Sequence record: ON287375.1
Length of the DNA: 64,000 bases
Strand: one strand, 5' to 3'
A program made the translations under genes and the position numbers. The notes under the pieces are model-generated. The model was not told the DNA's origin and did not search any database. It worked only from the letters and a program-made list of their open reading frames with translations. Shown here one piece after another: positions 3,161 to 41,979 of this stretch (position 1 is its first letter; the number at the start of each line of letters is the position of its first letter).

Positions 3161-3169
3161 GGAGCAAAC

Positions 3170-14677: not shown

Positions 14678-14708
14678 AGAGAACCTACCCGCATTGGGTA
14701 GGTTCTCT
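14678..14708. terminator. hairpin terminator between convergent genes
   Basis: agagaacctaccc-gcatt-gggtaggttctct, 13-bp stem, T-run at 14725-14735. Confidence 0.85.
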
Positions 14709-14733: not shown

Positions 14734-16212
14734 TTATGCTTTATAGATAGAGCCAGTTCCAGATAAGGACCCTAAGTTGAAGTTCATTTCAACAGTATTA
14801 CCAATACCGTCATCAGCCAGATAAACAGTCCATGGGCCAGACCCGGAAGGAGCACTTACTATATTAGCACCCCTTAACCATATTAACTCCAAGTTACCAG
14901 TTAATTCAACAGGTGTACCGCCTATGGATCGCTGTTGTTTAGCTGTAAATATAAACTTAGAGTTCTTAGCCCCCTTGTCCAATACGACAGGAGATGCAGT
15001 AACTGAGAATGGTTGATCGCGGCAAGTTATAGATGGTAGCGTTACAACATATTCCCCATATTTAGTTTTAACAGTTACAGTACAGGAAGAACTACCATAT
15101 TTATAGCCAGAGGTATAACTTACTTCGTATTCACCATTGGCAGAATTACTAGCTTTAAACCCACTGCCAAAATTACTAAATGATGTAGAAGGTGAGTTAT
15201 TAGTTCTCGATACGTATGTCGCATCTGTGACTATCTCACCCGTATCATAAACCATCTTAAATTTCATGTTACCGTTAGACAATGAAATGATGGAACCTTC
15301 ACTCAAGAGGCTTGCTTTAATTGATTTTGGTTTAGCTAGTAAATTAAAACTAACCTTCAAGGTCATTGGCCAAGTATAACCTTCCTGGGTAACATCAAAC
15401 TTAAACGTTACTTCATGAGTGATGTCATTAGTTATTTCTTTAATGACTTCCCAAGAACCTTGTGCATCAAATTTTAAGTATTCACTAGTGCAAACTAAGT
15501 TGGTAATAGATGAAGTAATGTCTTCACCTTTACCATTTGTAATTTTAATTGGCATGGTCCCTTTATCACCGTAAACTATCGAGGTGATAAGTTTCTCAGC
15601 CTGTATTACGGGTTCCCAGCAGACATTGAGCGTATGTGAAATACTAGATGAATACAGGTTAAGATTAAAATTAAAGTTGGTAGAAAACACAGCTGGGTCT
15701 TTATTAATCTTACTTTCATTCATTTTTACGCTGAAGGAGTTTTCATCAGTTCCCACTATGGTGAAGGTATCAGAACTGGTGTTAACTAATGTTGGATCTT
15801 TCAGACTTACTGTTTGATCTCCATTCTTCAATGACATATTTATTTTGTAAGTATTATCAGAAGAATGTTTCACTTTGTTGGGTTCTGCAGTTACTATTAT
15901 TAACTCAGAAGCACCGATATCGACAGTAAGGTCTTGGGTTGAAATATCCTTTCCTTCCACATTACCATTTACATCTTTTCTGGCAAATACGATTTGTAAA
16001 TCAGACTTTGCTTTAGCCTTGGCGGTGAAGGGTACTTCTCCAGTGACACCATCTTCATTCGCCTTACACTCACCCAGGTTAATTGCATCTTTAAGTACTG
16101 AATTATCTTTGTCTATTGTCACTTCATTCGGTATAGGGGTGTTTCTGAATGTAGGACGATATACTATCTTTCCAGTTTGCCCTTCTAGTAAATTAATTAT
16201 TTTAGACACTAC
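14734..16212 (-). CDS. Ig-like repeat virion fibre segment 4, ~492 aa
   Basis: Likely GTG start at 16212, 5 nt after a GGAGG SD (track start 16221 has no SD); ~100-aa beta-rich repeats like those of the upstream genes. Confidence 0.8.
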   Translation of the reverse strand, partial: VVSKIINLLEGQTGKIVYRPTFRNTPIPNEVTIDKDNSVLKDAINLGECKANEDGVTGEVPFTAKAKAKSDLQIVFARKDVNGNVEGKDISTQDLTVDIGASELIIVTAEPNKVKHSSDNTYKINMSLKNGDQTVSLKDPTLVNTSSDTFTIVGTDENSFSVKMNESKINKDPAVFSTNFNFNLNLYSSSISHTLNVCWEPVIQAEKLITSIVYGDKGTMPIKITNGKGEDITSSITNLVCTSEYLKFDAQGSWEVIKEITNDITHEVTFKFDVTQEGYTWPMTLKVSFNLLAKPKSIKASLLSEGSIISLSNGNMKFKMVYDTGEIVTDATYVSRTNNSPSTSFSNFGSGFKASNSANGEYEVSYTSGYKYGSSSCTVTVKTKYGEYVVTLPSITCRDQPFSVTASPVVLDKGAKNSKFIFTAKQQRSIGGTPVELTGNLELIWLRGANIVSAPSGSGPWTVYLADDGIGNTVEMNFNLGSLSGTGSIYKA

Positions 16213-16300
16213 TTCCTCCATATATCAGCAGGTGGTTCTGTATGAATATCTTTATAATGATTAATACCTTTCTTCTTCATATCTTTGATCTCTAGTTAGA

Positions 16301-16309
16301 TGACCATAG
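16301..16309 (-). promoter_or_regulatory. putative late promoter, TATG core
   Basis: CTATGGTCA on the minus strand, identical to 40538-40546; phiKZ late promoters carry TATG at the start site. Confidence 0.5.
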
Positions 16310-16313
16310 AATT

Positions 16314-16341
16314 CGAACCTTACGGTTTCCCGTAAGGTTCG
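16314..16341 (-). terminator. hairpin after segment 3
   Basis: 12-bp perfect stem with a GAAA loop on the minus strand; U-tract only on the plus side, so possibly a processing/stability hairpin. Confidence 0.65.
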
Positions 16342-16346
16342 TTTTA

Positions 16347-19300
16347 TTAGATTATTTCAACATCAAACTCTGGTTTAGGGTTTGCATTTACATTGGTAGA
16401 CAGTTGAACTTCAGCCGTTAGTTCGGTGGTTATTCCGGCATAAACAACAATGAATTTCAGTTCTGCTTTCTTGGAGATAACATCTGAGGTATCCGATTTA
16501 ATAGATTTGAATACCCACTTGCCATTAGCATTTTTACTGAATTCAAAATCATCTTTGATATCATCGTTATTAGTACAGACAATATCAGTCACGCTGGAAG
16601 CCACACTTACATCGCCACTCTTCACATCATAGGAAAGTTCTTTCTCTTCCCACAGATCAAAAGTATATTCCGTTACAAGATCAGTTAGAACTGGCGTCGG
16701 TGGATTAATATTGACAACAAGATCGATTTCTTTCACATAGGTCGTCATGAACTCAGTACAAGTAAACTTGACTTTGATATTAGCAATCCCGGTTTCACCT
16801 TTAGGTTCGCACTTAATAATGAAACGACCATTGCTTGGTTCACGAGTAATCGACCCAATTATAGTAAGCGAATTATCAACAGATATTAATTCACATTTAC
16901 CAGCAGGAATATATTTTTGAGGTCCTGGAACTAGCGGAACTTCTAGTTGGAAGTAAGTAGTGTACTGTTTATCATCATTAGTGATGGTATTATCAGTCTG
17001 AACTACTTCTGGTTCAGTACCTTGAGTGGTTAATGGTTGACTAACAACTTTGCTACTTAACCCATCAACATCCATATACCAAATAGGCGTGAATGTAGCT
17101 TGCGCCCAACCCACTGCGATATTGGACTCGTAACGACCTGGTTTATCTTTATCTTCTTTGAGATGAGAATAACCAGTATAACCATTATTGCGTTTTTCAC
17201 CATCAGAGAAATCATAATAATAACAGGTGAGGTCAGTTGCAGGAGCACCGTCAGCGTAATTGAGATCAAATACTACTTTGTTATCACCCTGTGTTAGAAT
17301 AGGATCACTAACTGGAACTAATGTTAATTCCTTCCCTATCCCAATAGGGAGACTGATTTCAAGAGTACCCTGTTTACCCAGCTTAGGATTAACTGCATTA
17401 ACCGTACCAGTAATCTTAACTGTTCCATCGGCAGCTTTAGACTTAAGTTTAAAGACTGTCATGGTAGGGTTCTTATCCGCCTGAGCTGGTTCATTAACAA
17501 ATTCGGCATTATCAGATATGGTGAAATCATCATAAGTAAATTGTAATTTACTATTATAGATGAGAACCGGGTTATTAGTTCCCAACCCAGTCCAGCTTGC
17601 CTGCATCAAGGAGAACTTAAAGTCAACCTCACTACCCCCTTGTGGAAGCATACTAATAGGGACTAACTCTTCTAACCTTAATGGCGGCTTGATGATGTTA
17701 ACACTAAATTGCTTAACAGTGAACTCTTTCTCACCAGATTTGATCACTAAATCAAACAGAGCCGAGTCAATACCTTTATCACATTTGATGCCTAGTCTGT
17801 AGATGTTATCAGCAACCTTGGTCAGAGATTCACCCACGCTGAAGATACCGGATCCTGTTTCAGGAACATTAGTGGTTTTAACAGAAACAAGTTCTGCATC
17901 AGTCACTGGACCTTTAACATTATTATCGAGTTTAAATTCAAGATAACATGGAAGATCTCTATTGGTATTCTCAGGATCAACCTGCATTATCTCCAGGTCT
18001 GCTTGAGGTGTGGCGGTAACCTCTTCCTTGACACCATCACGTACAGTCACTTCAAGCACTAAGTCATCATAGGTATAAAGGATACCCTGTATTTCCTCAG
18101 AAACGCTAAAGGTGAGTGTTTGCGTAGTATTAGGTTGTTCAGATGAAATATACCCGGTTGCGTTACCTTTACCTAAAAAGGTGTATGGTCTATCGATCTT
18201 CAAGCCATCACTTGATTTTTGAGAAACTACTGTAGTACCAAATGAAATTGAGGTCTCACCATCAATCCTAACTTGTCTGGTGAAGAAAATTCCCATCATG
18301 GTAGACTTGAACGGATCTATTACCGCTCCGACTCTACTTACTGTAACTGGAGAACCTTCTGTCTTGAATTCCAGTTTGGAATCAATATCGTATTTAACAC
18401 CGGCGATAGTTAGCTCAGGAATAATAGTAACTGTACCTGGGAGATAGCCAACATCAACGATCATGGTATAAATAGATGTATCTGCGGTACCCTGGGTAAA
18501 CTCACCAGGAACATTACTAACAACATCATTAGTCGGTACAGAAGTTATTGTAGAGTTTACGATCTTACCAGGTTGATGGAGATATTCACCTTTAGAGTTC
18601 AGGACACGGGCAACAACAGTTGCTTTCTTCAGATAACCCAGATCTTCATCTGTCAGCAATTCAACAGTTAAGGTATCCTTCTCTACAATAATATCATGAT
18701 CCACACTTAAAAGTCTGCTATCTGGCGAGGCAGAGAAAGTCCCATAGATGTTAATATTTTCCACTTTACCATTTGGAATAATGGTTATCTTACCTTTACC
18801 ATCTGCATCTAAGGTCACCTTCCCTGAAAGGTCGGCAACCATTCCGCCGGTAATTTCTAATTTAACAAAGGTCCCTTGTAGTGGAGAATTTGGTCTAGCG
18901 TATTTATCTTGCGTACCAAATATCTCTATCTCAGTTGGGCCGTCTGTTGCGAATACCTTATTAGGGGTAAAGGTAAATTTACCTGGGGTACCTGGGGTTT
19001 TATAGGTCTTTTTAGGAATAACAAAATCAAAGCCATCCTTAGATAACGTCATATCAATATTAAATGAACCTGATAAATGCCCTAAATTAATATTAATCGC
19101 ATAAATCCCATCTGGCTTGGTATCTACAATTATCCCGCTATACCCCGGAACTAAATCTGGAGTATTTGGACTTCCAACTGCCTTAAGATTTTTTAATGTA
19201 ACTCCCTCTACAGGCACTCCCTGATCATCAGTTACTTTAAAGTAAATGCGATTGGAACTTGCGCCCACTAATTCTTCATCCTTGGTGATCCACTCAGCAT

Positions 19301-19562
19301 TAAGATTAAACTTAGGCTGAGGTTTCTTATTGAGGAAGGTCATCGGGACGACCGTCTTATACTGATCTTTATAAACAAATGTCAGGTTCAGTTTATATTC
19401 AGTATCTTGATCAACTTCCTTAAGGAATTTATAAGTTATGGTATCTTCCGTCTTGGAGGAAATCTGGACTCCCTCATGAGAGTCCAGTGTGATTACCATA
19501 TCAGGATCAAGGTTACTGATAGTCTGACCATCCACTTGTGCAGCTTGTTTAAGCGTGCTCAT
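16347..19562 (-). CDS. Ig-like repeat virion fibre segment 3, 1071 aa
   Basis: Long ORF, SD aagga overlapping the upstream TAA, ~10 beta-rich repeats. Confidence 0.88.
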   Translation of the reverse strand: MSTLKQAAQVDGQTISNLDPDMVITLDSHEGVQISSKTEDTITYKFLKEVDQDTEYKLNLTFVYKDQYKTVVPMTFLNKKPQPKFNLNAEWITKDEELVGASSNRIYFKVTDDQGVPVEGVTLKNLKAVGSPNTPDLVPGYSGIIVDTKPDGIYAININLGHLSGSFNIDMTLSKDGFDFVIPKKTYKTPGTPGKFTFTPNKVFATDGPTEIEIFGTQDKYARPNSPLQGTFVKLEITGGMVADLSGKVTLDADGKGKITIIPNGKVENINIYGTFSASPDSRLLSVDHDIIVEKDTLTVELLTDEDLGYLKKATVVARVLNSKGEYLHQPGKIVNSTITSVPTNDVVSNVPGEFTQGTADTSIYTMIVDVGYLPGTVTIIPELTIAGVKYDIDSKLEFKTEGSPVTVSRVGAVIDPFKSTMMGIFFTRQVRIDGETSISFGTTVVSQKSSDGLKIDRPYTFLGKGNATGYISSEQPNTTQTLTFSVSEEIQGILYTYDDLVLEVTVRDGVKEEVTATPQADLEIMQVDPENTNRDLPCYLEFKLDNNVKGPVTDAELVSVKTTNVPETGSGIFSVGESLTKVADNIYRLGIKCDKGIDSALFDLVIKSGEKEFTVKQFSVNIIKPPLRLEELVPISMLPQGGSEVDFKFSLMQASWTGLGTNNPVLIYNSKLQFTYDDFTISDNAEFVNEPAQADKNPTMTVFKLKSKAADGTVKITGTVNAVNPKLGKQGTLEISLPIGIGKELTLVPVSDPILTQGDNKVVFDLNYADGAPATDLTCYYYDFSDGEKRNNGYTGYSHLKEDKDKPGRYESNIAVGWAQATFTPIWYMDVDGLSSKVVSQPLTTQGTEPEVVQTDNTITNDDKQYTTYFQLEVPLVPGPQKYIPAGKCELISVDNSLTIIGSITREPSNGRFIIKCEPKGETGIANIKVKFTCTEFMTTYVKEIDLVVNINPPTPVLTDLVTEYTFDLWEEKELSYDVKSGDVSVASSVTDIVCTNNDDIKDDFEFSKNANGKWVFKSIKSDTSDVISKKAELKFIVVYAGITTELTAEVQLSTNVNANPKPEFDVEII

Positions 19563-19577
19563 GGTTGGGACTATTCC

Positions 19578-22500
19578 TTATTCTGGTTTAAGTACGAATT
19601 GTTTCAGAGTTACTGGTGTCTCTACATCACCTTCACCTGTCGTCTGGAAACCTTCACCTAAAGTCAGTTGCTGATAGCGAGGAAGTTGATTATAAACCAT
19701 ACTTGCATTCGCTGTTTTAACCACATTACTTGGATTGGTGTATTTCAATGAAATACTAAATCCAGTATTAGGTATTTCAGCATCTGTGTCACTGGTGAAT
19801 TGTAACTTCAGAGAATCCTTACTGAGTGAGTTAGCAACTACAGTAACTTTAGAGTCATTGGTGGGACCAACAACCAGTTTAGAGTCAGTTAAAGGAACTT
19901 GAGTCTTACCATAGTAGACAATTAACTTAGTCAACTGCTCGTCACCAAACTTACCTTTAAATACATAAGGATCAGGTTGTGAAGCATACAGAGTTTCTTC
20001 ATCCTTGATGACCGTGATTCCCATCATGTCAACTACATAGTCAATACCTTCCACATCACTAGTAGCTGACTTAATTTTAACCTTCAGCGTCATCGCACCA
20101 TTAACTACGGTATTGCTTGCATTACCATTAAATCGGTAAGTGGTTTCTTTAGTAGTGCTATTATAACCAAGTGGAGTAGCGTCGGGTTTAACATATTGAG
20201 CACCACTTAACTGGGTTACAGTAAGCTCACCAACCGGGATACCTTTCAATTTACCAGAGAAGTAAACCGGAGCATATCCACCAGTATAGGTTAGAAATTC
20301 CCCATTAGGCCCCTTAGATGTATCACCATACCGATGAGTGATTACCAACTCTTTACCATCATAACTATTGATGGTGAACGGAACTGTGACTTTAACCTCT
20401 TCAGAATCAGCGGCATACTTATAGGTATATTCCACATTCTGCTTGGTTAAAGATATGGCTTTATCAGAGATGATCTGATATCCGCCTTTCAGCCCATTAT
20501 GCTTAACCAAATCAGTTTCAATGAAACTAATAGAGTTAACGTTGCTGGTTACATCTTTACCACCTAATGTGAATTTAAGTGGTGAAGTGTCACTCTTGTC
20601 CCATACGTTTACTGTAGGATCAGTTTTTGTTACAACTAGTGCACCTACGAGCTTAACATCTAATGGGGATTCAGTAACCATTCCACCCGCATTTGCTTTC
20701 ACCTTAACAGAAACAGCTTTGTCATAAGGAACTTCTTGCAAGATTTCAAACGTTAGTGCTGTTTTACTTCTCATTGCGATACTTATAACATCTGAAGGTT
20801 CAATAGACCAAGCTACACCAAAATCATCTAAGTTATAATTAGTTTCACCATTAGTTAATTTACCATTAACTGTTATTCGGGAACCCTTACTGCCTGAGAT
20901 TTCAGTTTGATCCAGAACTAATTTGAAGTTACTAGAATCAATAACAGCATAAATAGGATCGAGATAGCTTTGTGTTTCAATCGTTCCGTTGGTAAGAGTG
21001 AATGCAACAAACCCTTTCCCCTCAACACCAGCTCCTGTAACAACAACACTATAAACGCCATCGCCGATCTCTTTAAAGTTCTTAGGTGAAACAACTGATC
21101 CACCCGACCCAAGTCCACCACCTTTGATAGTTACCCCAGTAGCTGGTTTACCACCTAATGTGATCTTGAACTTCATTTCTGTTTCTGCACCTTTGACACC
21201 ATTAAACTCGGTATCTATCGGCTCAGTAACAAATTCGGCCTTAGGAACAGGTATTTCTACATTAAGGTAAGACAACCCTGAGAATGTTGGATCTGAAACA
21301 GGTCCAGTTATACGTAATGAAGTTCCTGAAGTTCCTGCTGTAAATTCCAAAATAAATTTACTTTGGTCTGTCGGATCCTTTTCTAGAGTATACCCTTCAG
21401 ATAAAATTATGGCATTCCCATTGGTGGGTATTGGGATGATTTTATTACTGAGTAGTCTAGGGTTGGTTAATTTATTGTTGCTATTTTTCAGTGTGAATTT
21501 AATTTTATTTTTAATTCCTGGGATAACTGTATCGGCTGTATCGAGTACCGTATCTTGAACCTGAGTACTTGAATTAGGGTAAACCCAGAAATTGGCGTCA
21601 TTTGGAGCTGGTTCGCACTTATATTTATCCGGGTCTGAGGCTAGTCTAAATCTCCATGGGTTATAGTAGCCATTATTATTCCCAATAAACCCTCTGGTTA
21701 TTTTTAGATATAATGTTGTACCTAAACCACCTGCCAAAGTACAAGCTATCTCACCACGATCATTACCGGACACTGTTCCGATCCTAGGATAAAACTCTAT
21801 ATCTGGGCTATCTAATGGAACTCTGACACCGTTCTTAAATAAATAAAGCTCTGTTTGAGAACCTGTTCCATTAATATTGGTTCTTGGGAATTGCACAGAA
21901 CCCAAGGCCCCAGAAATACCACTACCCATTCCATAGACACCGAGTATATCACCCATAACGAAATAATTGATATCGTTTATTGTCACGGCATTCAGGTTTT
22001 CAATATTTCCATCGGTTCCTTTAAGTTTTACTTTTAAGGAAGTAACTGTAGGGGCGTTTGTTCTATTGGGTGATGTTAAAGAGGTACTAGCCCTAATGGT
22101 AACCTTTAAAGAATTGTTGTCGCCAGATGGGGTTTGGGAAACTAACTTGACATTCACATCTAAAGACCCATGGTTCACCAGTTCGAGCATATTTCCGGCT
22201 GGTTTGCCTTTAAATGTTCCCACTAATTCATAATTGGTATCCTGAGCTGTAGAAGCACCAATTACTTTTTCTTTCATAGTTACATCTAATACTTTACCAG
22301 ACCAAGCAGCGATCTGATAAATACCATAAGCTACTTTGGGTTTCCAGTTACCTGTTACATTAACTTCAAATGTAAAGAAGGTAGATTTAGAAGCGCCTGC
22401 TGTAGGGGCAGTATCAACAACCCAATGACCAGGGTTTTCAGGATCTTCTTTAATATATTCGTTAGCTACCAATTTCAGATTACGAATCTGAGAAGTAACA

Positions 22501-24227: not shown

Positions 24228-24247
24228 GGTTATTGGCCCTATTAGTA

Positions 24248-27200: not shown

Positions 27201-30200
27201 TCAACAGCAGTCCAAGTACACAGTTTAGTAATGTCAGTTGTACCGGCCATTACTTTAAATGGTAATTCGAATTGCTGGAAGATCTTCAATGACAGTGGGT
27301 CAGTGACACTTTCAATAGAAGGGATTTGGTATGCGTTTAACTGCACAACCCCTCTTTGTTGAGTGTCATTAGTTCCATCATAACCTTCGACTTTCCAATA
27401 GAAATTGAACTTAGCGAAGAATGAAGATTTCCCTTTATACTTCAAGACCATCTCATCGCCATCAGGCTCAACAGATATGACCTCGAAATAAGGACCATAA
27501 CTACCGGCTGCTTCATCAAGGGTTACTTTAGTGGTTGGTAAACCACGGTTGGTAATCTTGAATCTAATTTCATCTTCATAACCATCACCCAGAGGGAATG
27601 GGTTTGGCGCACCTGTCCCTTGAATCCAGACAGCGTGTGAAGTTGAACTAGCAACCAAAGTAGGAAGCACAACATCAGGTACTTGTATAGTACCGCCCCG
27701 GAATGGAACCTCAATCACCCACGTAGTTTTTATCTCGGCGGAAGGAGGATTCCCTATATGGTAATCGGTACACCACATCCAAGCATTGTCATTTGCTTCA
27801 TCACCAGCAAGAACGAGGACACCTTCATCGGCACTATTAACAGGAGTGATACTAATAGGTTTACATTGACTGACTACATCAACACCATTAACGGTGATCT
27901 TGAATATAGTCGATCCACCTACCCTGTTAAATGGCGCAACCGAAACACGAATCGGTGTAATGATTGGATAATCAGCAGGTTTAACGACCTCAAATGGTTG
28001 AGTGAATTCACCTTTATGGGTAAACCCAGTTGCAGGATCTTTATACTCAAGCGAGAATTTGATTTCGCGTTTACCTAATTCAGCATCCAGAGGCGTAATG
28101 ACTTCATAAGTATAACCAGTTGTGGTGCTACCAGTTACTTTAATGATGTCATCTGGAACCATGGTGTATTTCAGGTTAGCGTCATTGATAGGGATATTCT
28201 TATCGTTGAGTTTAACTGTTAATGGCAATGTCCCTTTGTCACCATTACCACCTTTCAGGTTATTATTAATGCCTGTAACCAAAAGCGGCTTGTAAATAAA
28301 CTTACAGTCAAGATACAATGCAGTCCAGTCCAGATTCTCTACACCAGGTTTAGGTGAGTTTGGAACTCTGAAGACTAATTTGATCTCGCCCTCATATGGA
28401 CTGACAGCTTGACCGAAATACCGTCTTCTGTTATCACTAGCACCAGTGCCTCCAAGAGGACTAGATTTATTCAATTCCAATACACCTTTCAAATCGGTGT
28501 CTAGGTAATCGAGTGTATCCACATCGTTGAAACTAACCTTATCCTTAAAGACGGTTTGTGTTTCAAATAGGATGGATTCATCATCCATAGGCATTTCTAA
28601 TGACAAAGCAAGTCTATCTCCAGCTATTGGCTGAGATGGATTACCACGCATGAAATGAGCGATGAATGTCTTCTGATCCCAAGGGGCAATGTTGAAGACT
28701 ACTTCTGCTTCACCTTTCCATGTCCAGTTACGGTAGATACCGTTATAGATCATTTTCAGGGTAAGCGATTTGGCAGTTACATCAGCATTTACTACGGTGA
28801 AGTTTTTAACAGATACAGTAATGTAACCATTAGGTTGTTCTTCATCCAGTTCACAGTTCATCCAACCAGATTCTGCTGGTGACGGTAAACTAGGAGTCAG
28901 TAGGTTCAGATCACCGCATTTTGCTGATGTGATACCGATTTGACTGGTTTCAAACATCTTGCAAGCTTTAGGGGTAACCGGAACAATAGCTACTGGGGCC
29001 GAGGTATACTTTTCAGGAATCTCTACACGACGTGTAAAGTTATTTCCACCGTAAGTATAAGTGATGTTCATGAAATCAGAAACAGTCACTTCACGACCTG
29101 GAGCAACAACACCTTTCAGTGAGTAGTTAAAGCTTTCAGCATTCCAGTCGGTAACAGTAAGGACTCCTGCGTTAGGAGAACTACCCTCACCTTTCTCAAC
29201 TGTGATTTTCAGAGCACCGTTAGCAATTTCCTGTTTAGCATCGATAGGAATCCCACCAAACAGAATCTGGAGTTTATATTCCCCAGTATCGCCATCCTTA
29301 CCAATCAGCAAGTTATCACGATCAGCAATTTCGACACCCAACTCACCCATGATCTTGGTAGGAACTTTACCTTTCCAAACATCACGTGGTGCTGGATCAG
29401 TACCTGCTGCTGGAGACCAGAACACCAGTTCCATTTCACCCAGACCAGCTTCCACACCTTCAAAGACCAACTCAAAATCAACACCAGCCATCGAGTGACT
29501 AACATACTTGAGTGATTTAGGGAAGGTACTTAACTCTGGTTTAAAGGTTGCTGCAGCACCTACTTGCTTGCCTTTATAGATAGGGCGAACTTTCAGTTTA
29601 GATTCTACATCTACTGCACCTTCAAGATTAGAAGGCGAAACTGTACATTTGAAACGGGTAGGATCATCACTTCCTTGGATTTCAAATGAAGCATCAAAGT
29701 CCAATACTTGAACTTCTTCTACTTCATCTACTTTGTAGAGAACCTGCATACCGATTGTCTTGGTACTTGGAGTTTTCTCAGCATTGATGATTTCCCAACC
29801 ACGTGGTGCGATAAATTCAATCCATTCATTTTCAGGTTGAGTGGTTTTATAACCCTGAATAGGACTTAAAACTTTATCACCCATCTTGATTCCCTGACCG
29901 AAGGAACCCAGATCCCAAATCTTACCTTTAATTGGATCGTTATTAGTGATGCCAACTTTACCCATCTGAATACTCACTTTAGAAGAAATGGTTCCTTCTT
30001 TAGGAGTAGGTGCACCAACTTCATAAGTGACTTTGATGTCTTCAGGATAAACAGTTAAGGCTTCACTAACGTTAGAGCGAGTTGCCTGGATAATAACACC
30101 ATCAGCGGTTCCGCCAACAATATGGATGGCATGAGGTTTACCATTGTCGACTAACGAGTACTTCAGACCTGGAGTATTACCGAGGATCGGGTATTCGCCA

Positions 30201-33200
30201 TATTTCAAGGCCAATACAATCGTACCAGTTTCCATCCAAGGAATCGTGATTGCTGGAGTCTTGGACTCAACAGTAAACACTTCATCAGAAGAAGTCGTGG
30301 TTACTTTAACTGTGGTCGTTACATAGTCATCATTAACAACCGGTGGGTTGGTTGCATTTTCTCTGACAAATGTAATTGTTAATGTATCGGTAGCTTGACC
30401 CAGTAAGGTATACGGCAAGTCACCATCTGGAGTAATTTCACCCAGAGTGATGTTCTTAGGTATGGTACTCTTAGTAAGATCTACAGTCAGGTTCTTAGCA
30501 GGATCACCAGCATAAGTGAAGCGGAACTTCATTACGCCAGGAGTACCAGCTTTACCGGATAGTTCTTTAGGACCTTCGGTAATTACCAATTTCTTACCGT
30601 CGTACTTAGCGATTGTAAAGGTGCTTTCAGTATCAAGGGTATAGGTATTCCCACCCATGGAGTACTGTGCACTCAAACGCAGAGTAGTGGTAATAGAGTT
30701 AGTTTGACTACCGCTAGTAACGTACCAGTTATCAGGTTCGGTGAACGTGATGTATGGGTTAGTGCCGCGAGGAGTTAACTTCTCAATTGGGACCTTTCTA
30801 CCTTGGTCATCAACCAGAGTAATGCCGACAATACCACGCTCCCACACCTTAACGTTAAATGAAGGGTTTGCACCGATCTTAACACCAGGGATGTGAATCT
30901 TAACAGGTACCGTGTTATCGTTAGTCCAAAGCTTACCGGTCGGATCAGTATACTCAACATGAATCTTGAATTCATAGTCGTAATCAGTATCCTGTTCACC
31001 GCCTTTAGCCAACTTGATAGTCAGAGACTCATCATTAACTTTAACCAACTCAACAGGTTCACCTGCACCAGAGGTTGCAGTCAATTTAAGTTTAGGATCG
31101 TTCAGAGTCAACGGAATACCATCGAAGTTATAAACCAGATCGATAGTCTGCTCGGATTCCCAAACACCAGAGATACTCTTAGTGATATTAACAAGGTTCA
31201 ACTCGTGAGGCCAAGCGATATCAGTTGGAATATCAAAGGACATTGTCAAGTTAGATGGAACATGACGATAGATCAGCGTCATCAGGTATTTACCACCACG
31301 AGTGGTAGTATAACCCACAACAACACCTTTATTCTCTACAGGAGCACTAACGCCCATGATGAATGTTTCTGGAATAGTAGACATTGCTTTATCGAGCACA
31401 ACGTCGTCATCTGCTGGTTTACCTTTGTAAACAAAGTTACCAGTGATGCTACCTTCAACACGAGAATCTTTGGTGATGGATTTAGTATCCAACTGACCAC
31501 CAAAAGTAATCTGGTCCCAGGCCGGCAAATTGAAAGTAACTTCAGTTATGAACTTACGATTTTTAGCTTGCCCTACAGTCCATTTGATTTCTAATGGTAC
31601 GGTGATTGTTGTTGCTTCTTTCTCAGCCCAGATAACTTCCCAGTTAAAGACATTGAAAGCAATGTACTTACTTGTACCAATTGGCGTAATACTTGTTACT
31701 GCACCGTTCCAGTTAGTTTTACCAGCAATGATGTTGTAAGGTAAAGTACCGGTATCCCAGATAGCCGCATCGATAGTTGCCGGAGCATTCTCTAAACGCA
31801 TCTCTGGATAAACAGTGAAGACAGGTAATGTAAAGCGTACTTTGGTTTTGTTACCATCAAGAGGGTCGGTATAAGTGTATTCAAGATCAACACCAGACTG
31901 ACGGGTTTCACCGATGTATTCCCAAATGTTGTTGACTACCTCGATCCCGTCATCTTTGATATCAACAAAACGAATATCAGTTTCATCAAGACGTTTGTAG
32001 GAAAGGTTAGCATCAGTCAGTGGGACTACTTTACCTGCGAACATCAGTGTGATATGTGCCAGCTCAGGAGAGCCTGCAACTTCCACAGTGGTGTTTTTGT
32101 CGTAATCGCTCAGTACCAGTACACGAGACTGTTTAACATCAGTAGTGATGCTTACAATCGCAATATCACCAGTCTTAGGATCATCCACACCAGGACGTTG
32201 GATATAAACTTTACCAGGTTCGGTAGTTGGGTCCAGTTTAGTGTAGTTGGCACGAATAACGTTAGTTTCCGGGATATAAGAGAAAGAATCAAATCTGATA
32301 CCTTTAGGGGTAACCAGTTTATCTTTCATAACTACAGCGCGATCGGTGATATCATCAGCTAAGTGGTATACCTGGAACTCGAAGTAACCAGTTGAATCTG
32401 ACAGACCTTCGATCTTAACATTTGCCGGAACAGCTACCGTATCAGTGTTACCACCTTCACCTGTATCTGGATTCCAAGGGAGAACTCTGAAGTTCTGCTC
32501 GAAAGTAAAGTCACGCCAAACACCATCAACAGTGTAACGGAATTTGAACGGTACTTTAGTTACGATGGATTCTTCATCAGCACCTGGGGTTTTAGTTACG
32601 ATCCACTGAACGTCGCTTCCTTTCTTATGAGTAATGTACTCACTAGGATCTTCAAATTGGTATCCGCTGATACCACCAGTAACATCAGCGCCGTTAACTA
32701 ACAGTTTGAATGGATAACCACCAAACTGGTATTTCTTAACTTCTATCGGATTAGGATAAAGCGGAACTACTTCAACAGTAGAGACCTGGGCAACGATTAC
32801 GGTTACTTGACGAGTAATGGTATACCGCACACCAGTTGGTGCGATCCAAGCGAATCTTTGATCATAAACATCTTGGATTTCTTGGCCAGGCTTGTTGGCA
32901 TCTTTGATCAGTGTATAATTAACACCGAGCTGATCCACACTGTTGTATTCGATAAGACCTTTATCACCTTTAACACCCGTCTTGATCTGAAGATCAGTTG
33001 GTGAAATAGGTTCGTTATTATAGAACGCACCTACAGTGAGAAGACCTTTATCATTTTTATAACCACGAATAACTGCCGGGAAACTACGGATCTCAAACTT
33101 AGGTGCAGTTTCTGGACGAGTCAAGATAACGTTAACATAAGCCGGAGCTTTAGATGTTACATCACCTTCATTATAAGTAAACTCAGCAGTATACAACCCA

Positions 33201-34369
33201 CCTACTTGTTCAACAGTATTAGGGAAGTTGGTGCTCAAATGACCTTCATAGATCATAGAACCATCGGTATCATGACCTGTGAATTTCAGAGGACCAAAGT
33301 TACCTTGCTGGAGCATCTGGGAAGGTGGCGCTGTGATCTTAACTTCTTTACCTTTGTAGAAAGCTTTGATCTTAACAATTACATCAGAACCAGAAGGAGC
33401 TGTAACTGTAGGGGGATCAATCTCAAAGGTCAGATCAAGTTCATTATCTTTCTCGATAATTACATTGATCTTAAACGTTTTCTTAACGGGACGGTTTTGC
33501 CACATATAGGTAACACGGACAAAGATCTCATCGTGAACTTCTTTCTCAGCAGAACCATAAATGGTTTCACCCAGAATGAAGTTACCGTCTTCAGAACGTT
33601 TAGGAATAGTGTAACCAGAACCCGTACTGATCTCGATCTGAGCTTCATGGGTAATGTCGATCGTGGTGTTGAACCAGTAAGTGTTTGGGATGCTGAAGTC
33701 TTTACCACGTTGAGTAGTAATAGACTCTGGCAAGTTAGACGTGATTCCAGGGACATTAGCTTCATCCAGAACCAGTTCATAAATGAACAGCGGATAAGTA
33801 CCAGTACCGAAAGACGCATCAGTGATTTTAACAGTACCTGATTCCAGGGTGTCGTAATCAATGAAAGTCAGAGATTCACGTTCAGTGACATACTCACTAA
33901 AGAACAGTTCACCAAAAGCAGCCATTGGGCCAGAGATAGTCTTAGCTTCTTCTTGAGAAACCAATACACCATAGTTGTTCAACCACTTACACCATAACAG
34001 TGCATGATCAACTTTATTGGCTTTAACATAAGCTTTCAAGTTATCCAGGTCTTCGATCTCGATCATAGGAACGGCGAAGTCTTCCAGGATATCTTTCATC
34101 TGTACACGAGTGATGTCGACGTCAACACGTGCAAAACCGGTTTTGCGCGCAGTAAAGCAAACGCGAGTAATACCATCTGGGAATGCTACTGGATTCTCAA
34201 TAACTAAATCACCAGCAACAAGTCCAGTGTAACGCTCTTTAGCGAGAGCTAACTCGTCCTCAGGTCCTTCAACCTCAAGGCGTTTGATACGTTCCTTTAA
34301 GAAACGCTCAACAGGCGTGTATAACGGATCGTTAATACACTTTTTGTTAATCTTAATTTGCTCTGCCAT
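24248..34369 (-). CDS. giant Ig-like repeat virion fibre segment 1, 3373 aa, with conserved N-terminal domain
   Basis: Start at ATG 34369 (MAEQIK) after aggag SD; ~200-aa N-domain plus ~29 repeats of ~100-115 aa. Confidence 0.92.
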   Translation of the reverse strand: MAEQIKINKKCINDPLYTPVERFLKERIKRLEVEGPEDELALAKERYTGLVAGDLVIENPVAFPDGITRVCFTARKTGFARVDVDITRVQMKDILEDFAVPMIEIEDLDNLKAYVKANKVDHALLWCKWLNNYGVLVSQEEAKTISGPMAAFGELFFSEYVTERESLTFIDYDTLESGTVKITDASFGTGTYPLFIYELVLDEANVPGITSNLPESITTQRGKDFSIPNTYWFNTTIDITHEAQIEISTGSGYTIPKRSEDGNFILGETIYGSAEKEVHDEIFVRVTYMWQNRPVKKTFKINVIIEKDNELDLTFEIDPPTVTAPSGSDVIVKIKAFYKGKEVKITAPPSQMLQQGNFGPLKFTGHDTDGSMIYEGHLSTNFPNTVEQVGGLYTAEFTYNEGDVTSKAPAYVNVILTRPETAPKFEIRSFPAVIRGYKNDKGLLTVGAFYNNEPISPTDLQIKTGVKGDKGLIEYNSVDQLGVNYTLIKDANKPGQEIQDVYDQRFAWIAPTGVRYTITRQVTVIVAQVSTVEVVPLYPNPIEVKKYQFGGYPFKLLVNGADVTGGISGYQFEDPSEYITHKKGSDVQWIVTKTPGADEESIVTKVPFKFRYTVDGVWRDFTFEQNFRVLPWNPDTGEGGNTDTVAVPANVKIEGLSDSTGYFEFQVYHLADDITDRAVVMKDKLVTPKGIRFDSFSYIPETNVIRANYTKLDPTTEPGKVYIQRPGVDDPKTGDIAIVSITTDVKQSRVLVLSDYDKNTTVEVAGSPELAHITLMFAGKVVPLTDANLSYKRLDETDIRFVDIKDDGIEVVNNIWEYIGETRQSGVDLEYTYTDPLDGNKTKVRFTLPVFTVYPEMRLENAPATIDAAIWDTGTLPYNIIAGKTNWNGAVTSITPIGTSKYIAFNVFNWEVIWAEKEATTITVPLEIKWTVGQAKNRKFITEVTFNLPAWDQITFGGQLDTKSITKDSRVEGSITGNFVYKGKPADDDVVLDKAMSTIPETFIMGVSAPVENKGVVVGYTTTRGGKYLMTLIYRHVPSNLTMSFDIPTDIAWPHELNLVNITKSISGVWESEQTIDLVYNFDGIPLTLNDPKLKLTATSGAGEPVELVKVNDESLTIKLAKGGEQDTDYDYEFKIHVEYTDPTGKLWTNDNTVPVKIHIPGVKIGANPSFNVKVWERGIVGITLVDDQGRKVPIEKLTPRGTNPYITFTEPDNWYVTSGSQTNSITTTLRLSAQYSMGGNTYTLDTESTFTIAKYDGKKLVITEGPKELSGKAGTPGVMKFRFTYAGDPAKNLTVDLTKSTIPKNITLGEITPDGDLPYTLLGQATDTLTITFVRENATNPPVVNDDYVTTTVKVTTTSSDEVFTVESKTPAITIPWMETGTIVLALKYGEYPILGNTPGLKYSLVDNGKPHAIHIVGGTADGVIIQATRSNVSEALTVYPEDIKVTYEVGAPTPKEGTISSKVSIQMGKVGITNNDPIKGKIWDLGSFGQGIKMGDKVLSPIQGYKTTQPENEWIEFIAPRGWEIINAEKTPSTKTIGMQVLYKVDEVEEVQVLDFDASFEIQGSDDPTRFKCTVSPSNLEGAVDVESKLKVRPIYKGKQVGAAATFKPELSTFPKSLKYVSHSMAGVDFELVFEGVEAGLGEMELVFWSPAAGTDPAPRDVWKGKVPTKIMGELGVEIADRDNLLIGKDGDTGEYKLQILFGGIPIDAKQEIANGALKITVEKGEGSSPNAGVLTVTDWNAESFNYSLKGVVAPGREVTVSDFMNITYTYGGNNFTRRVEIPEKYTSAPVAIVPVTPKACKMFETSQIGITSAKCGDLNLLTPSLPSPAESGWMNCELDEEQPNGYITVSVKNFTVVNADVTAKSLTLKMIYNGIYRNWTWKGEAEVVFNIAPWDQKTFIAHFMRGNPSQPIAGDRLALSLEMPMDDESILFETQTVFKDKVSFNDVDTLDYLDTDLKGVLELNKSSPLGGTGASDNRRRYFGQAVSPYEGEIKLVFRVPNSPKPGVENLDWTALYLDCKFIYKPLLVTGINNNLKGGNGDKGTLPLTVKLNDKNIPINDANLKYTMVPDDIIKVTGSTTTGYTYEVITPLDAELGKREIKFSLEYKDPATGFTHKGEFTQPFEVVKPADYPIITPIRVSVAPFNRVGGSTIFKITVNGVDVVSQCKPISITPVNSADEGVLVLAGDEANDNAWMWCTDYHIGNPPSAEIKTTWVIEVPFRGGTIQVPDVVLPTLVASSTSHAVWIQGTGAPNPFPLGDGYEDEIRFKITNRGLPTTKVTLDEAAGSYGPYFEVISVEPDGDEMVLKYKGKSSFFAKFNFYWKVEGYDGTNDTQQRGVVQLNAYQIPSIESVTDPLSLKIFQQFELPFKVMAGTTDITKLCTWTAVDTDYIEIFRPINTQLGPSGQVVKADTTEVKKEVIFTIQSPASHGNLTLTQKVNIIIAAWDQIEFYGIPTTGFVKQDDGLVVPIPFTNTWNAVIVQAMMMNKVRPNGGGVSSLSDFLKITSSDPDAVTQISQISDGNGVTSRIMPNKAGKFPGTMVLRYKGNAAEASAPNGYPAGTEGKNQSTIDVTWYVFEDKITFREGFEPKPLIIPNGSTAVIDVPFDAVWGLRQVMINSTAEVNFVGLSHDTGIASLFGQNNTTGTNRFNWDKDRYKIQPAKITVGESDVTSYYTFNIQWINPINKKNYSFSYDQPIIFKGKEGAKDPVLTVTDVQEVTTDVWKKQTGLPFKLAIDGVNYPIDTSTVTSVKVADADKAWLEAGPKLTDGYRVIDGDPEPSVKEGTFILTVVQGPRTWEIEQKVKFNISAYDGNSLRMNIRLPNSFNNGVAIPVNTNTLIMFEGTFQGVALTNNYNKLSYWPAKSSQTQIEVYGQTFQQMYYQLSAKGILDSQDSEQATYCIGFKEKENDPNAKEGVDYVILTIPTYCYNPNRFYPVTWDPVIEGMAGTNLNYKWNFTLRRGIVASKLGSGTNAASSTDIKPAGVLNRTGFSDNQLEYAFASEIDVATKETDMTIMIGNTSDFDTMAARFPVKAIQHTNVPFPTIKDPQTELTVHYNDTGAVPFKVDWKGTDVTDQISIVRISDNSYIEIKDKQWHVKHADPQTVKVMPTIEADIVLDSVTFTLKQQVTFTVLGYNGKQINVEAGFALLMVDEVGYLEIKGDYSGDPLSGNVIFDAANSDNGGIVTFGAYEFTTNESMVIKLTGKAPGEDGVRIRIKSVHDTGNGNIGSDYVDLYPKVTVLPKELTPAARFETTGEGNYWEPPVLGQAVMLGDKPLANTDSDLIIEILDYPDVTIKTLSSATVGYSFTNNSDTEIKHQFKQKFTYKGRSEYVVDITLTQLPSPTTPFVTDITQIDAEYGKSYLAPFKVISPR

Positions 34370-40300: not shown

Positions 40301-40498
40301 ACCACTCTTAACTTTAGTAGCTGGCTCTATGGACACATCTTTGTAAGTTAGACCAGTATAACGTTCTTTAGCTAATGCTAGCTCATCTGCTGGACCATTA
40401 GCCTCTAGATCAGCTAAACGTTTATCAAGGGCTTTCTTAACACACAACCAGACAGGATCCTTTATGTTCTTGTCTTTTTCATCTAATACTACAGTCAT
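37391..40498 (-). CDS. putative virion fibre protein, 1035 aa, with conserved N-terminal domain
   Basis: SD ggagga; N-terminus homologous to the 3373-aa and 201-aa proteins; beta-rich repeats. Confidence 0.88.
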   Translation of the reverse strand: MTVVLDEKDKNIKDPVWLCVKKALDKRLADLEANGPADELALAKERYTGLTYKDVSIEPATKVKSGSVMVCIAVRKTGFARVDIEIEKQNILEIFETFNVPVKNTSTLDEFKAFLNKEIPEPGFLVNRTDADQLVIILPNTDNLKANVLELLGNIFFSKITWDEFPKLNEIYSGDLTIIDPSINDTIIKLTSQKAYNDAANKYTVDSKVVSLADGKMTANIYLLDKDGNKGTPTAWVVNDPTKSTDLLNIKTTQEITENGQCMVVSWEYNTDALTDRIFMAQGMMKVDNEIYSYNINHAAPKVLRLSGAVKQLSEDKAQITLTYEDSVGTLDLNKAYLINGGDEEMKDAVATDITSPSAGVINFTGPYDYNPEAPALRYFTGNVILKGELDRQVAFSTFNSPSWFYKLVPPTPKEAVELKEVKNTFDIESKLVNYEVEYKFPSNNSDAVNPTITIVTKVGGEVVDYEIVDKDLTQKQLLKFSVKDKALETDNLSLETVVNFSFPDYLDVPDASITMTTDVKQAAMDVEVSDLKLGVLTVTGSYPKAQADKWSYKDIAGTGFVLEPINATPDGEHYTLSFQLNPDAPTKSKISGVLVNGSDEITFSKEIERKKIFFNQYSGMSTSTSMASMDIGVSGEDTSAKNLICASTALLTYTENGTKKTFDSEIKTANARNEDMYRITFTAPQFSEATSVTNNLWFDDKSVPNSSTYMNGTFEGLMPMPAGATGIIAEPESLDATDVKFQFDGKIKFFFNDPAKTPVTKPSIYGNVKLNGAPWNSVNITENDTGYGLKFNRLDETVVDTLLMEGVGSAYGYIGYPKISFEQRYGYTGGKQLVGEWGNMVKYSTPGIFRVIDEKGNTVYVDKWEVKGFEPGIWEGTGPLSITKASQGLYGTGSLSMHINGINKPDSGATNIVILADGVEYTYRTEFDYIPVDPGNVSVVYDKERDLAVFTVKLPENGITSDKFVVQRDYTYGATEGGTNTFNWIRDAKAIDEKTVTFTCYVMSKASTDYEIWFSNADVKCSSQSTRITLTIEP

Positions 40499-41741: not shown

Positions 41742-41979
41742 GATGTTCTCCAATAGATAATTTTGTTTACAGGAATTTGCTGTTAGCTAATGATTAGTGT
41801 TGGAATAAAAACTTAAAGATAACCTAAAATAAATTCTTAATGGAAGACGCTATTATACGTTAACTTAAAGATGCTTTCACCGAAAGGTGGGAGGGAAAGG
41901 GTGGATTTGTTTATATAGCGATTACGTAGTAATCATCCTTTTAAGTCTTTTGAACTTTCACTTCAATTTTCTTTTGGGT

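What the first reader, a model, noticed from the sequence alone, without database searches (positions are those of the whole stretch)
14734..34369. Candidate new system: a ~6,500-aa Ig-repeat fibre split over four genes and joined mid-domain (strand complementation)
Seen: four consecutive minus-strand genes (3373, 1549, 1071 and ~492 aa) are built from one family of ~100-aa beta-sandwich repeats. None of the three junctions falls between domains. Each upstream protein ends in a stub holding only the first strand(s) of a domain, and the next protein begins with the remainder of the same domain type. The A/B/C domain order continues across the junctions. Each gene has its own SD-like site, and junction 3 also has a hairpin and a late promoter, so the split looks maintained rather than accidental. 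Known: chaperone-usher pilins polymerise by donor-strand complementation of incomplete Ig folds. Inference: the C-terminal stub of subunit n completes the N-terminal domain of subunit n+1, giving an ordered, modular virion fibre of roughly 55-60 domains with exchangeable distal segments. I do not recall this being described for phage fibres.
Basis: partly seen in the sequence, partly recalled or inferred. Interest (0 to 1): 0.85.

Follow-up and report, generated by a model that had tools for sequence, protein, structure and literature searches.

The report
Phage Ig-fibre genes split inside domains
A jumbo Serratia phage encodes a roughly 6,500-residue string of immunoglobulin-like domains as four separate proteins, and two of the three gene boundaries cut through a domain at a place that is kept in every relative found, which suggests (but does not prove) that the pieces plug into each other by sharing beta-strands.

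Summary
The window is Serratia phage vB_SmaM-Yubaba, a jumbo phage of the Chimalliviridae. The four minus-strand genes are real: 3373, 1549, 1071 and 491 aa.

A structure model and fold search show strings of Ig/cadherin-like beta-sandwiches. No Pfam or PHROG family matches them.

Junctions A|B and B|C lie inside a domain. Uninterrupted copies of the same domain types exist inside gene A and inside relatives. The upstream "stub" carries the first strands. The next protein lacks them but repeats one strand, so the two halves overlap rather than being strictly complementary. Junction C|D lies between domains.

The same three joint types, with their own start codons and SD-like sites, recur in at least 12 independent phage genomes or contigs from several genera. 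The relative reading frames vary between them, which excludes assembly error, pseudogenes and conserved recoding. In a search of 1.84 billion proteins, 45 of the 46 matches with E at or below 1e-6 to the C-type N-terminal domain start at residues 1-5.

Protein termini are the best-conserved parts and the bodies vary. End-to-end assembly by strand complementation or exchange is the best reading, but it is inferred: no multimer model, virion proteomics or imaging was available. I rate it a new variant of known kinds, of moderately high interest.

The parts
24248..34369 (-). Gene A, 3373 aa. It comprises a conserved N-terminal anchor, about 30 Ig-like domains, and a junction-1 stub at the C-terminus.
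   Evidence: Its ten orthologues are all 3360-3376 aa long.
33380..34369 (-). Anchor region of A (aa 1-330). It is the most conserved part of A and has a paralogue at the N-terminus of the gene at 37391-40498.
   Evidence: Mean identity among orthologues is 0.74-0.94. BLASTP against U2 gives 33% identity at E 1e-23. The region occurs in 33 phage records, 2-3 copies per genome. Its fold is unresolved: pLDDT is about 50-75.
24335..24634 (-). Uninterrupted Z*-type domain in A (aa 3246-3345). This is the unsplit counterpart of junction 2.
   Evidence: Alignment A3. In the AF2 model its first 30 residues have pLDDT about 90 and form short strands.
24251..24334 (-). Junction-1 stub (A aa 3346-3373). 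It holds the first strands of an X-type domain, through the strand that carries the PFKV motif.
   Evidence: Alignment A4; pLDDT 70-73.
24228..24247 (-). 20-nt spacer between A and B. B is in the -1 frame and starts with GTG. There are several stops in the A frame and no slippery heptamer.
19578..24227 (-). Gene B, 1549 aa. It begins with a junction-1 N-terminus and ends with a junction-2 stub.
23943..24227 (-). N-terminal X-type domain of B. It lacks the first two strands found in uninterrupted X domains.
   Evidence: HMM positions 4-83 of 85 map to B aa 5-90. Alignment A4. DSSP of the uninterrupted X domain.
20478..22280 (-). Variable cassette inside B (aa ~650-1250). It is only 24-70% identical to the sister phage Sureiya, while the rest of the array is 98-100% identical.
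19581..19676 (-). Junction-2 stub (last 32 aa of B). It holds the first strands of a Z*-type domain.
   Evidence: Alignment A3.
19563..19577 (-). 15-nt spacer between B and C. It is in frame in this phage but in other frames in relatives, and it carries an AAGGA motif.
16347..19562 (-). Gene C, 1071 aa. It begins with a junction-2 N-terminus. Its body matches none of the X, Y or Z HMMs. It ends with an X domain and a junction-3 end.
19293..19562 (-). N-terminal Z*-type domain of C. It lacks about 20 residues (two short strands) that the uninterrupted form has.
   Evidence: Alignment A3. In the search of 1.84 billion proteins, 45 of the 46 matches with E at or below 1e-6 start at residues 1-5 of the hit.
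16314..16341 (.). 12-bp hairpin in the 137-nt C|D spacer. A GGAGGA motif follows it, before the GTG start of D.
14734..16209 (-). Gene D, 491 aa. Its junction-3 N-terminus is a Y domain without its first strand, followed by Z and X domains and then about 200 aa that match none of the three HMMs. It is the distal end of the array.
14678..14708 (-). Terminator-like hairpin (13 bp) just downstream of D.
37391..40498 (-). Gene U2, 1035 aa. Its N-terminus is a paralogue of the A anchor. It has no X, Y or Z repeats and is probably a second appendage using the same attachment site.
34484..37312 (-). Gene U1, 942 aa, directly upstream of A. It is conserved in relatives and has no family match.

Best explanation
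A, B, C and D are translated as four separate polypeptides. They are inferred to assemble head-to-tail into one long, thin, probably monomeric chain of about 60 Ig-like domains, held to the particle by the conserved N-terminal anchor of A.

The links are cognate pairs of a C-terminal end and an N-terminal domain, of three types.
- In types 1 (A|B) and 2 (B|C), the upstream protein ends in a roughly 30-residue beta-hairpin-like stub. The stub corresponds to the first strands of an X or Z* domain. The downstream protein starts with that domain minus those strands.
- The most likely mechanism is that the stub inserts into the incomplete sandwich by strand complementation. Because one strand is present in both partners, the insertion probably displaces or pairs with the partner's own N-terminal strand (strand exchange).
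- Type 3 (C|D) joins a complete X domain with a conserved tail to a Y domain that lacks its first strand.

Shown here: separate genes, the position of the splits within domains, conservation, cognate pairing, and the Ig fold. Inferred: physical joining, the strand mechanism, presence in the virion, and a role in adhesion.
For: - Genes and junction anatomy.
- Fold.
- Splits inside domains: stubs align to the first ~30-33 columns of uninterrupted domains. The next N-termini start at column 17 (junction 1) or column 30 (junction 2). The stub-equivalent residues of the uninterrupted Z* domain are modelled with pLDDT about 90.
- Same domain both split and whole: an A-like relative (P0053) has an uninterrupted Z* domain 44% identical to the N-terminus of C, with a single copy of the shared strand. 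AH04's A-type protein ends directly in a junction-2 stub, the domain type that is uninterrupted near the end of A in Yubaba.
- Conservation: the joints recur in at least 12 genomes or contigs. Of the 46 matches with E at or below 1e-6 to the C N-terminal domain among 1.84e9 proteins, 45 are at residues 1-5. Most of those proteins end in a type-2 or type-3 end.
- Termini are conserved and bodies are not: B aa 1-50 scores 0.56 against about 0.25 for the interior, and C aa 1-50 scores 0.61 against about 0.13.
- Purifying selection: dN/dS is 0.05-0.09 for A, C and D.
- The anchor is conserved and has a paralogue in a neighbouring gene.
Against: - There is no direct evidence that the proteins touch each other or are in virions. 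No proteomics for this clade could be read, because the OBP paper is not held. N1M2 electron micrographs showed no tail fibres.
- The halves overlap rather than complement, so a simple 'missing strand' picture is wrong in detail.
- Junction 3 has no partial domain.
- In SXP01, L012 and L013 a type-2 end is followed by a type-1 start (B1|B2), so neighbours are not always cognate.
- Genomes with several type-2 links (OBP, SXP01, L016) raise an unsolved question of how order is specified.
Confidence: 0.5

Rival explanations
1. The four proteins are independent appendages or adhesins. The stubs are neutral left-overs of ancient gene fission, and the conserved N-terminal domains bind something else, such as a common site on the particle.
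For: The N-terminal domains keep their own copy of the overlapping strand, so they may fold alone. B1|B2 neighbours are non-cognate. Some proteins with a type-2 N-terminus end in unique tips.
Against: The stubs are kept in sequence and length across genera that share under 30% identity elsewhere. C-terminal type predicts the next N-terminal type in about 32 of 35 junctions. Only A-type proteins carry the anchor shared with U2.
Confidence: 0.2
2. Recoding (stop-codon read-through, -1 frameshifting, or translational bypassing between the duplicated strand codons) makes fused giant proteins. On this view the separate genes are only apparent.
For: In Yubaba, B|C is in frame with only 5 codons between the stop and the ATG. 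B is in the -1 frame of A, and B's frame is open for 20 codons upstream of its start, 12 of them inside the end of A. The duplicated strand would give a seamless domain if a ribosome hopped between the two copies.
Against: The gap length modulo 3 differs among relatives at the same junction: 2 or 0 at junction 1, and 0, 1 or 2 at junction 2. There are several in-frame stops after A, and I saw no X XXY YYZ slippery site in the overlap read by eye. Start codons and SD-like motifs are kept everywhere. The two strand copies share no DNA word longer than chance, 4-8 nt against a shuffled mean of about 5.
Confidence: 0.04
3. The stops are sequencing or assembly errors, or recent pseudogenising mutations in one long gene.
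For: None beyond the mid-domain position of the stops.
Against: The same boundaries occur in independently sequenced phages from Serratia, Klebsiella, Shewanella, Pseudomonas, Edwardsiella and Erwinia, and in five metagenome or 'Salmonella' contigs. dN/dS is 0.05-0.37 on both sides of the boundaries.
Confidence: 0.01
4. The conserved termini are mainly recombination linkers. They are kept because they let phages shuffle fibre modules, not because the proteins dock through them.
For: The number and size of modules differ widely between relatives while the ends stay the same: C-type proteins range from 84 to 3124 aa.
Against: Conservation is at the protein level. The one exchange seen between sister phages starts at an internal X/Y domain border in B, not at a gene junction. 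This reading does not explain why the cut lies inside a domain. It is compatible with the main explanation rather than exclusive of it.
Confidence: 0.1

Closest known systems
Chaperone-usher pili (donor-strand complementation and exchange of incomplete Ig-like pilins)
   Same: An Ig-like fold that lacks a strand is completed by a strand from the neighbouring subunit, which gives ordered linear polymers. This comparison rests on established knowledge, not on a test here.
   Different: In pili the missing strand is the C-terminal G strand and the donor is an N-terminal extension. Here the missing strands are N-terminal and the donor would be a C-terminal stub. The subunits are giant multi-domain proteins used once each. 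The eleven proteins scanned against family libraries (A-D, U1, U2 and three more neighbours) gave no chaperone or usher match. Assembly would be cytoplasmic. The acceptor keeps its own copy of one strand.
Type V pili of Bacteroidia (FimA/Mfa1 strand exchange)
   Same: The polarity is the same: C-terminal strands of one subunit fill the place of an N-terminal strand of the next. A resident N-terminal strand has to leave first, and the duplicated strand here could play that placeholder role (my inference).
   Different: Type V pilins are lipoprotein precursors whose N-terminal strand is cut off by a protease. No signal or lipobox-like N-termini are seen here, and no protease step is implied. There is no sequence relationship (no Pfam hits).
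T4 long tail fibre (gp34-gp35-gp36-gp37)
   Same: One fibre is encoded by consecutive genes, whose products join end to end in a fixed order. Joints are conserved and distal parts vary.
   Different: T4 fibres are mostly trimeric beta-structures with dedicated chaperones. Here the building blocks are tandem Ig-like sandwiches of the kind usually found in single-chain strings. There are no PHROG or Pfam matches to tail-fibre families. The joints lie inside a domain.
DUF7941 'fibre cloud' proteins of the chimallivirus Goslar (bioRxiv 10.64898/2026.04.21.720040)
   Same: The virus family is the same. These are abundant virion-associated proteins proposed to form head-to-tail chains by binding a segment of one protomer to the N-terminal domain of the next.
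   Different: The fold and family differ: no DUF7941 or any other Pfam hit here. Those are homopolymers of small proteins, not an ordered hetero-chain of giant Ig strings.
Ig-like decoration and adhesion proteins of phages (for example Hoc-type strings and Ig-string 'tail' proteins of Erwinia phage Y3 or Pseudomonas phage PaBG)
   Same: Strings of Ig-like domains displayed on virions. These are the next-best BFVD fold matches after the family itself.
   Different: Those are single polypeptides. No split-domain joints have been reported for them, and none were seen in the papers searched.

Membership tests
Ig-like / cadherin-like beta-sandwich repeat proteins (fold class) | Tandem ~100-aa all-beta sandwich domains recognisable by structure comparison | tested here: met
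   AF2 pLDDT 85, all-beta. Foldseek matches protocadherins, contactins and S-layer Ig strings at E 1e-15 to 1e-9.
Curated Ig-like sequence families (Pfam Big_1/2/3, Cadherin, BACON, He_PIG and others) | Significant match to the family HMM | tested here: not met
   0 Pfam families at E<=0.01 for A, B, C and D. 0 PHROGs.
Chaperone-usher donor-strand complementation | The acceptor Ig fold lacks its C-terminal strand, and the donor is an N-terminal extension of the next subunit | tested here: not met
   Here the acceptor lacks N-terminal strands and the candidate donor is a C-terminal stub.
Chaperone-usher donor-strand complementation | Dedicated periplasmic chaperone and outer-membrane usher genes | tested here: not met
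   No PapD or usher Pfam hit in A-D or in the five neighbouring proteins scanned (U1, U2 and three others). The rest of the genome was not scanned.
Chaperone-usher / type V pili (mechanism) | A strand from one subunit is physically inserted into the sandwich of the next | not testable with these tools
   The tools offer single-chain prediction only and do not return model coordinates.
Type V pili | Lipoprotein precursor whose N-terminal strand is removed by proteolysis before C-terminal strand insertion | tested here: inconclusive
   The polarity matches, and a resident N-terminal strand exists that would need displacing. The N-termini of B, C and D show no signal or lipobox-like sequence by eye. 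Proteolysis cannot be tested.
T4-type multi-gene long tail fibre | Sequence homology to gp34-37 or other known tail-fibre families | tested here: not met
   No PHROG or Pfam hits. No PDB sequence hits for the A N-terminus, U1 or U2.
T4-type multi-gene long tail fibre | Consecutive genes whose products join end to end through conserved termini | tested here: inconclusive
   Conserved cognate termini and gene order are shown. Physical joining is not shown.
DUF7941 fibres of Chimalliviridae | DUF7941 domain | tested here: not met
   No Pfam hit in A-D, U1 or U2.
Programmed frameshift or read-through genes | Conserved frame relation and a recoding signal at the junction | tested here: not met
   The frame relation varies among relatives. 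I saw no slippery heptamer by eye, and each gene has its own SD and start codon.

The most novel reading that the evidence does not exclude
A clade of chimalliviruses builds fibres a few hundred nanometres long from 3-6 giant polypeptides, using a small 'grammar' of three plug-and-socket joints.

Two of the joints are naturally split Ig domains. The C-terminal hairpin of one subunit would replace a self-capping N-terminal strand of the next. That is strand exchange with type-V-pilus polarity, but in the cytoplasm and without a chaperone, usher or protease.

The same domain exists split or whole in different phages. On this reading fission and fusion at these sites are an evolutionary route for changing fibre composition.
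Probability: 0.4. Interest if true: 0.8.

Novelty: new variant of a known kind. Interest (0 to 1): 0.66.

Why it matters
If the joints work as inferred, this would be a virus using split-domain strand sharing to assemble an ordered hetero-polymer. That principle is known from bacterial pili and from engineered split domains, but I found no description of it for phage fibres in the papers searched.

It would also give a sequence-readable rule for predicting which giant 'hypothetical' proteins of jumbo phages belong to one appendage: end type X docks to start type X. It would explain why these genes are cut at odd places. Finally, it would provide natural, small, cognate peptide-domain pairs of structural interest.

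Even without the mechanism, the result annotates about 20 kb of unannotated genes in a dozen jumbo phages as one modular Ig-fibre locus, and it corrects gene calls in two of them.

Tried and rejected
- **Family libraries.** Pfam and PHROGs on all six large proteins gave no hits.
- **PDB sequence search.** The A N-terminus, U1 and U2 gave nothing.
- **Anchor fold.** The AF2 model of A aa 1-546 was poor for the first ~310 residues (pLDDT 68 overall). Its Foldseek hits came only from the Ig part, so where the fibre attaches stays unknown.
- **Virion proteomics and morphology in papers.**
  - The N1M2 paper has no proteomics and saw no fibres.
  - The OBP genome and proteome paper is not held.
  - The Kc263, ZPAH34, AerS_266 and BMBAH1 papers add only 'visible fibers' for Kc263.
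- **IMG/VR scans with the C N-terminus.** The two scans returned four loci: one at pEt-SU, two at OBP, and one on a further contig that I did not examine.
- **Recoding.** I considered -1 frameshift, read-through and gene-60-like bypassing, and rejected all three.
- **Recent tandem duplication.** I rejected this as the source of the duplicated strand, because there is no DNA similarity above chance.
- **Late promoter.** The sigma-70 scan is uninformative for this phage family.
- **Joined sequences.** I did not build any sequence joining a stub to the next protein. Stubs and N-termini were always aligned as separate rows.
Full report
**Identity of the window.** The region is 100% identical to Serratia phage vB_SmaM-Yubaba (ON287375.1; genus Petsuvirus, family Chimalliviridae). 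It is 97% identical to its sister phage Sureiya. Weaker DNA matches reach Klebsiella phage N1M2, Shewanella phage SXP01 and Kosakonia phage Kc263. All genes in the region are annotated 'hypothetical protein'.

**The observation.** There are four consecutive minus-strand ORFs:

| Gene | Window coordinates | Length |
|---|---|---|
| A | 24248-34369 | 3373 aa |
| B | 19578-24227 | 1549 aa, GTG start |
| C | 16347-19562 | 1071 aa |
| D | 14734-16209 | 491 aa, GTG start |

- None matches any Pfam or PHROG family. BLASTP self-comparison gives only weak 20-25% matches between them.
- Iterated HMMs, seeded on the last three domains of A and run over these proteins plus relatives, converge on three recurring repeat types of about 100 aa each. 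I call them X, Y and Z.
- The repeats form X-Y-Z triads in A (aa 547-1700 and 3058-3345), in B, and in the order Y-Z-X in D. Most of C matches none of the three HMMs.
- In a six-frame scan of the whole window, the three HMMs hit only these four genes.
- An AF2 model of A aa 2674-3373, built with ten orthologues, has mean pLDDT 85 and is entirely beta.
- Foldseek matches that model to protocadherin and cadherin ectodomains, contactin Ig domains, S-layer Ig strings and ciliary Ig-string proteins, at E 1e-15 to 1e-9.
- Among predicted viral structures the best matches are the same family in pEt-SU, OBP and N1M2. Generic Ig-string 'tail' or 'long tail fibre' proteins come next.
- 'Ig-like repeat fibre' is therefore right at the fold level. 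'One family' is not.

**Anatomy of the junctions.**
- A|B: TAA, a 20-nt spacer, then GTG. B is in the -1 frame. Several stops follow in the A frame, and I saw no slippery heptamer.
- B|C: TAA, 15 nt in frame, then ATG, with an AAGGA motif upstream.
- C|D: TAA, then 137 nt that contain a 12-bp hairpin (16314-16341) and a GGAGGA motif, then GTG. A second hairpin follows D.

**Where the cuts fall.** I aligned uninterrupted X domains, the stubs at the end of A-type proteins, and the N-termini of B-type proteins as separate rows (A4). I did the same for the Z*-type domain (A3).
- The stubs cover the first ~30-33 columns of the domain.
- The following proteins start at column 17 (junction 1) or column 30 (junction 2) and run to the end of the domain.
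- Each downstream N-terminal domain therefore lacks the first 12-20 residues of its type. In the AF2 model of the uninterrupted copies these residues form two short strands: A aa 3045-3047 and 3052-3055 for X, and 3245-3248 and 3255-3258 for Z*. They have pLDDT 87-90.
- The halves overlap. The next strand (with PFKV at junction 1 and TLKQ at junction 2) is present both in the stub and at the start of the next protein. At the DNA level the two copies share nothing beyond chance.
- Junction 3 is different. C ends exactly with the last strand of an X domain. D begins with a Y domain that lacks only its first strand. No stub carries that strand.
- Two of the three junctions are therefore mid-domain, not all three.

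**Is the split maintained?** The three joint types recur in many independent sequences.
- They are found in Sureiya, N1M2 (where the B-type gene needs a GTG start upstream of the annotated one) and SXP01 (where one B-type gene is unannotated).
- They are also found in OBP, pEt-SU and AH04; in a 267-kb contig filed under Salmonella and a 135-kb Logan contig; and in three further metagenome contigs.
- Spacers are 11-43 nt at type-1 and type-2 joints. All stops are TAA, and all spacers carry an AGGA-like motif.
- The spacer length modulo 3 differs among relatives at equivalent junctions. No conserved read-through or frameshift can therefore fuse the genes, and the stops are not errors.
- A HMMER search of 1.84 billion representative proteins with C aa 1-100 found 50 proteins. 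Of the 46 with E at or below 1e-6, 45 match at residues 1-5 onward.
- The internal matches lie in A-like giants, where the domain is uninterrupted. One of these, P0053, is 44% identical to the N-terminus of C and has a single copy of the shared strand.
- AH04's A-type protein ends directly in a type-2 stub, the domain type that is uninterrupted near the end of A in Yubaba. The same domain type therefore exists whole and split in nature.

**A grammar of ends.** Proteins combine a start type (anchor, type 1, 2 or 3) with an end type (1, 2, 3 or a unique tip).
- Examples are anchor...1 (A), anchor...2 (AH04 gp117, OBP_207), 1...2 (B), 2...2 (OBP_206, SXP01 C1), 2...3 (C), 3...3 (a ~225-aa adaptor in OBP, pEt-SU, AH04 and SXP01 that Yubaba lacks) and 3...tip (D).
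- Among the junctions I read, an end is followed by its own start type in about 32 of 35.
- The exceptions are tandem B1|B2 pairs in SXP01, L012 and L013. These suggest alternative partners for the same end rather than a chain that follows gene order.
- Termini are the best-conserved parts. B aa 1-50 scores 0.56 and the last 49 aa score 0.41, against about 0.25 inside. C aa 1-50 scores 0.61 against about 0.13 inside.
- A's first 330 aa score 0.74-0.94. That anchor is shared with the neighbouring gene U2 and with 33 phage records, 2-3 copies each.
- The A orthologues are all 3360-3376 aa long.
- A, C and D are under strong purifying selection (dN/dS 0.05-0.09).

**Mechanism.**
- The best-supported reading is an ordered, end-to-end hetero-chain. 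The C-terminal stub of one subunit adds its strands to the incomplete N-terminal sandwich of the next.
- Because one strand is duplicated, I infer exchange rather than simple completion. The acceptor's own N-terminal strand may act as a placeholder that the stub hairpin displaces or pairs with.
- This is inference. The tools fold one chain only and return no coordinates.
- That the chain is a virion fibre also rests on analogy: Ig strings, a conserved anchor, and similarity to 'tail' Ig proteins. No proteomics for this clade was readable. N1M2 micrographs showed no fibres, but a chain one Ig domain thick could easily be missed.
- The extended length would be roughly 60 domains times about 4 nm, or about 0.25 µm (my estimate).

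**Comparison with known systems.**
- It works like donor-strand systems of pili, but with the reverse polarity to chaperone-usher pilins. The polarity matches type V pili, but there is no lipoprotein or protease step, and it is a member of neither family.
- It parallels the T4 long tail fibre in being a multi-gene fibre with conserved joints, but it has a different fold and no homology.
- The Goslar preprint proposes head-to-tail DUF7941 chains in the same virus family, but that domain is absent here.
- A full-text search found no description of strand complementation in phage fibres. That is limited evidence of novelty.

**Verdict.** I place it as a new variant of known kinds (multi-subunit phage fibres, and Ig strand sharing) with moderately high interest. 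The central mechanistic step is untested.

Noticed in passing
window 20478-22280 (B aa ~650-1250) compared with L002: Between the sister phages Yubaba and Sureiya, A, C and D are 98.5-99.4% identical. A ~600-aa cassette inside B is only 24-70% identical. It starts sharply after an X domain, and both joints of B are unchanged. It may be a specificity-determining cassette.
   Followed up: partly
window 37391-40498 and 34484-37312: U2 (1035 aa) shares the N-terminal anchor of A (33% identity over ~195 aa) but has no X, Y or Z repeats. U1 (942 aa) is conserved directly upstream of A in relatives. Both lack any family or PDB match. In N1M2 the U2 counterpart is a much shorter ORF next to an HNH endonuclease gene.
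   Followed up: partly
L003 9096-13715; L007 5925-10484: There are annotation gaps in relatives. N1M2 gp161 is annotated about 200 codons short of the GTG start that matches Yubaba B. SXP01 has an unannotated 1519-aa B-type gene.
   Followed up: yes
P0001-P0010 (orthologues of A): All ten orthologues of A are 3360-3376 aa long despite only 40-55% identity in the distal third. B-, C- and D-type proteins vary from under 100 aa to over 3000 aa. The fixed length of A may matter, for example as a spacer or ruler.
   Followed up: no
L004 14854-15546; L005 21414-22085; L006 13208-13882; L007 15538-16206: A ~225-aa protein with a type-3 start and a type-3 end sits at or near the end of the array in OBP, pEt-SU, AH04 and SXP01. 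It is absent from Yubaba. In pEt-SU and SXP01 its type-3 end has no partner gene downstream.
   Followed up: no
window 16314-16341; L004, L005 and L006 type-3 spacers: Type-3 junctions often carry a stable hairpin (several with a CTTCGG loop) between the stop and the SD motif. Type-1 and type-2 spacers are short and hairpin-free. This may tune the expression of distal subunits.
   Followed up: no
L016 1-14489: One metagenome contig has at least four successive type-2 links. How order is kept when several identical-type joints coexist in one phage is unexplained.
   Followed up: no
window 40608-41753: A ribonucleotide reductase small-subunit gene (Pfam PF00268, E 9e-47) lies directly upstream of the U2-U1-A-B-C-D block in Yubaba and in its relatives. 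The fibre locus therefore does not sit in an obvious structural-gene module.
   Followed up: no
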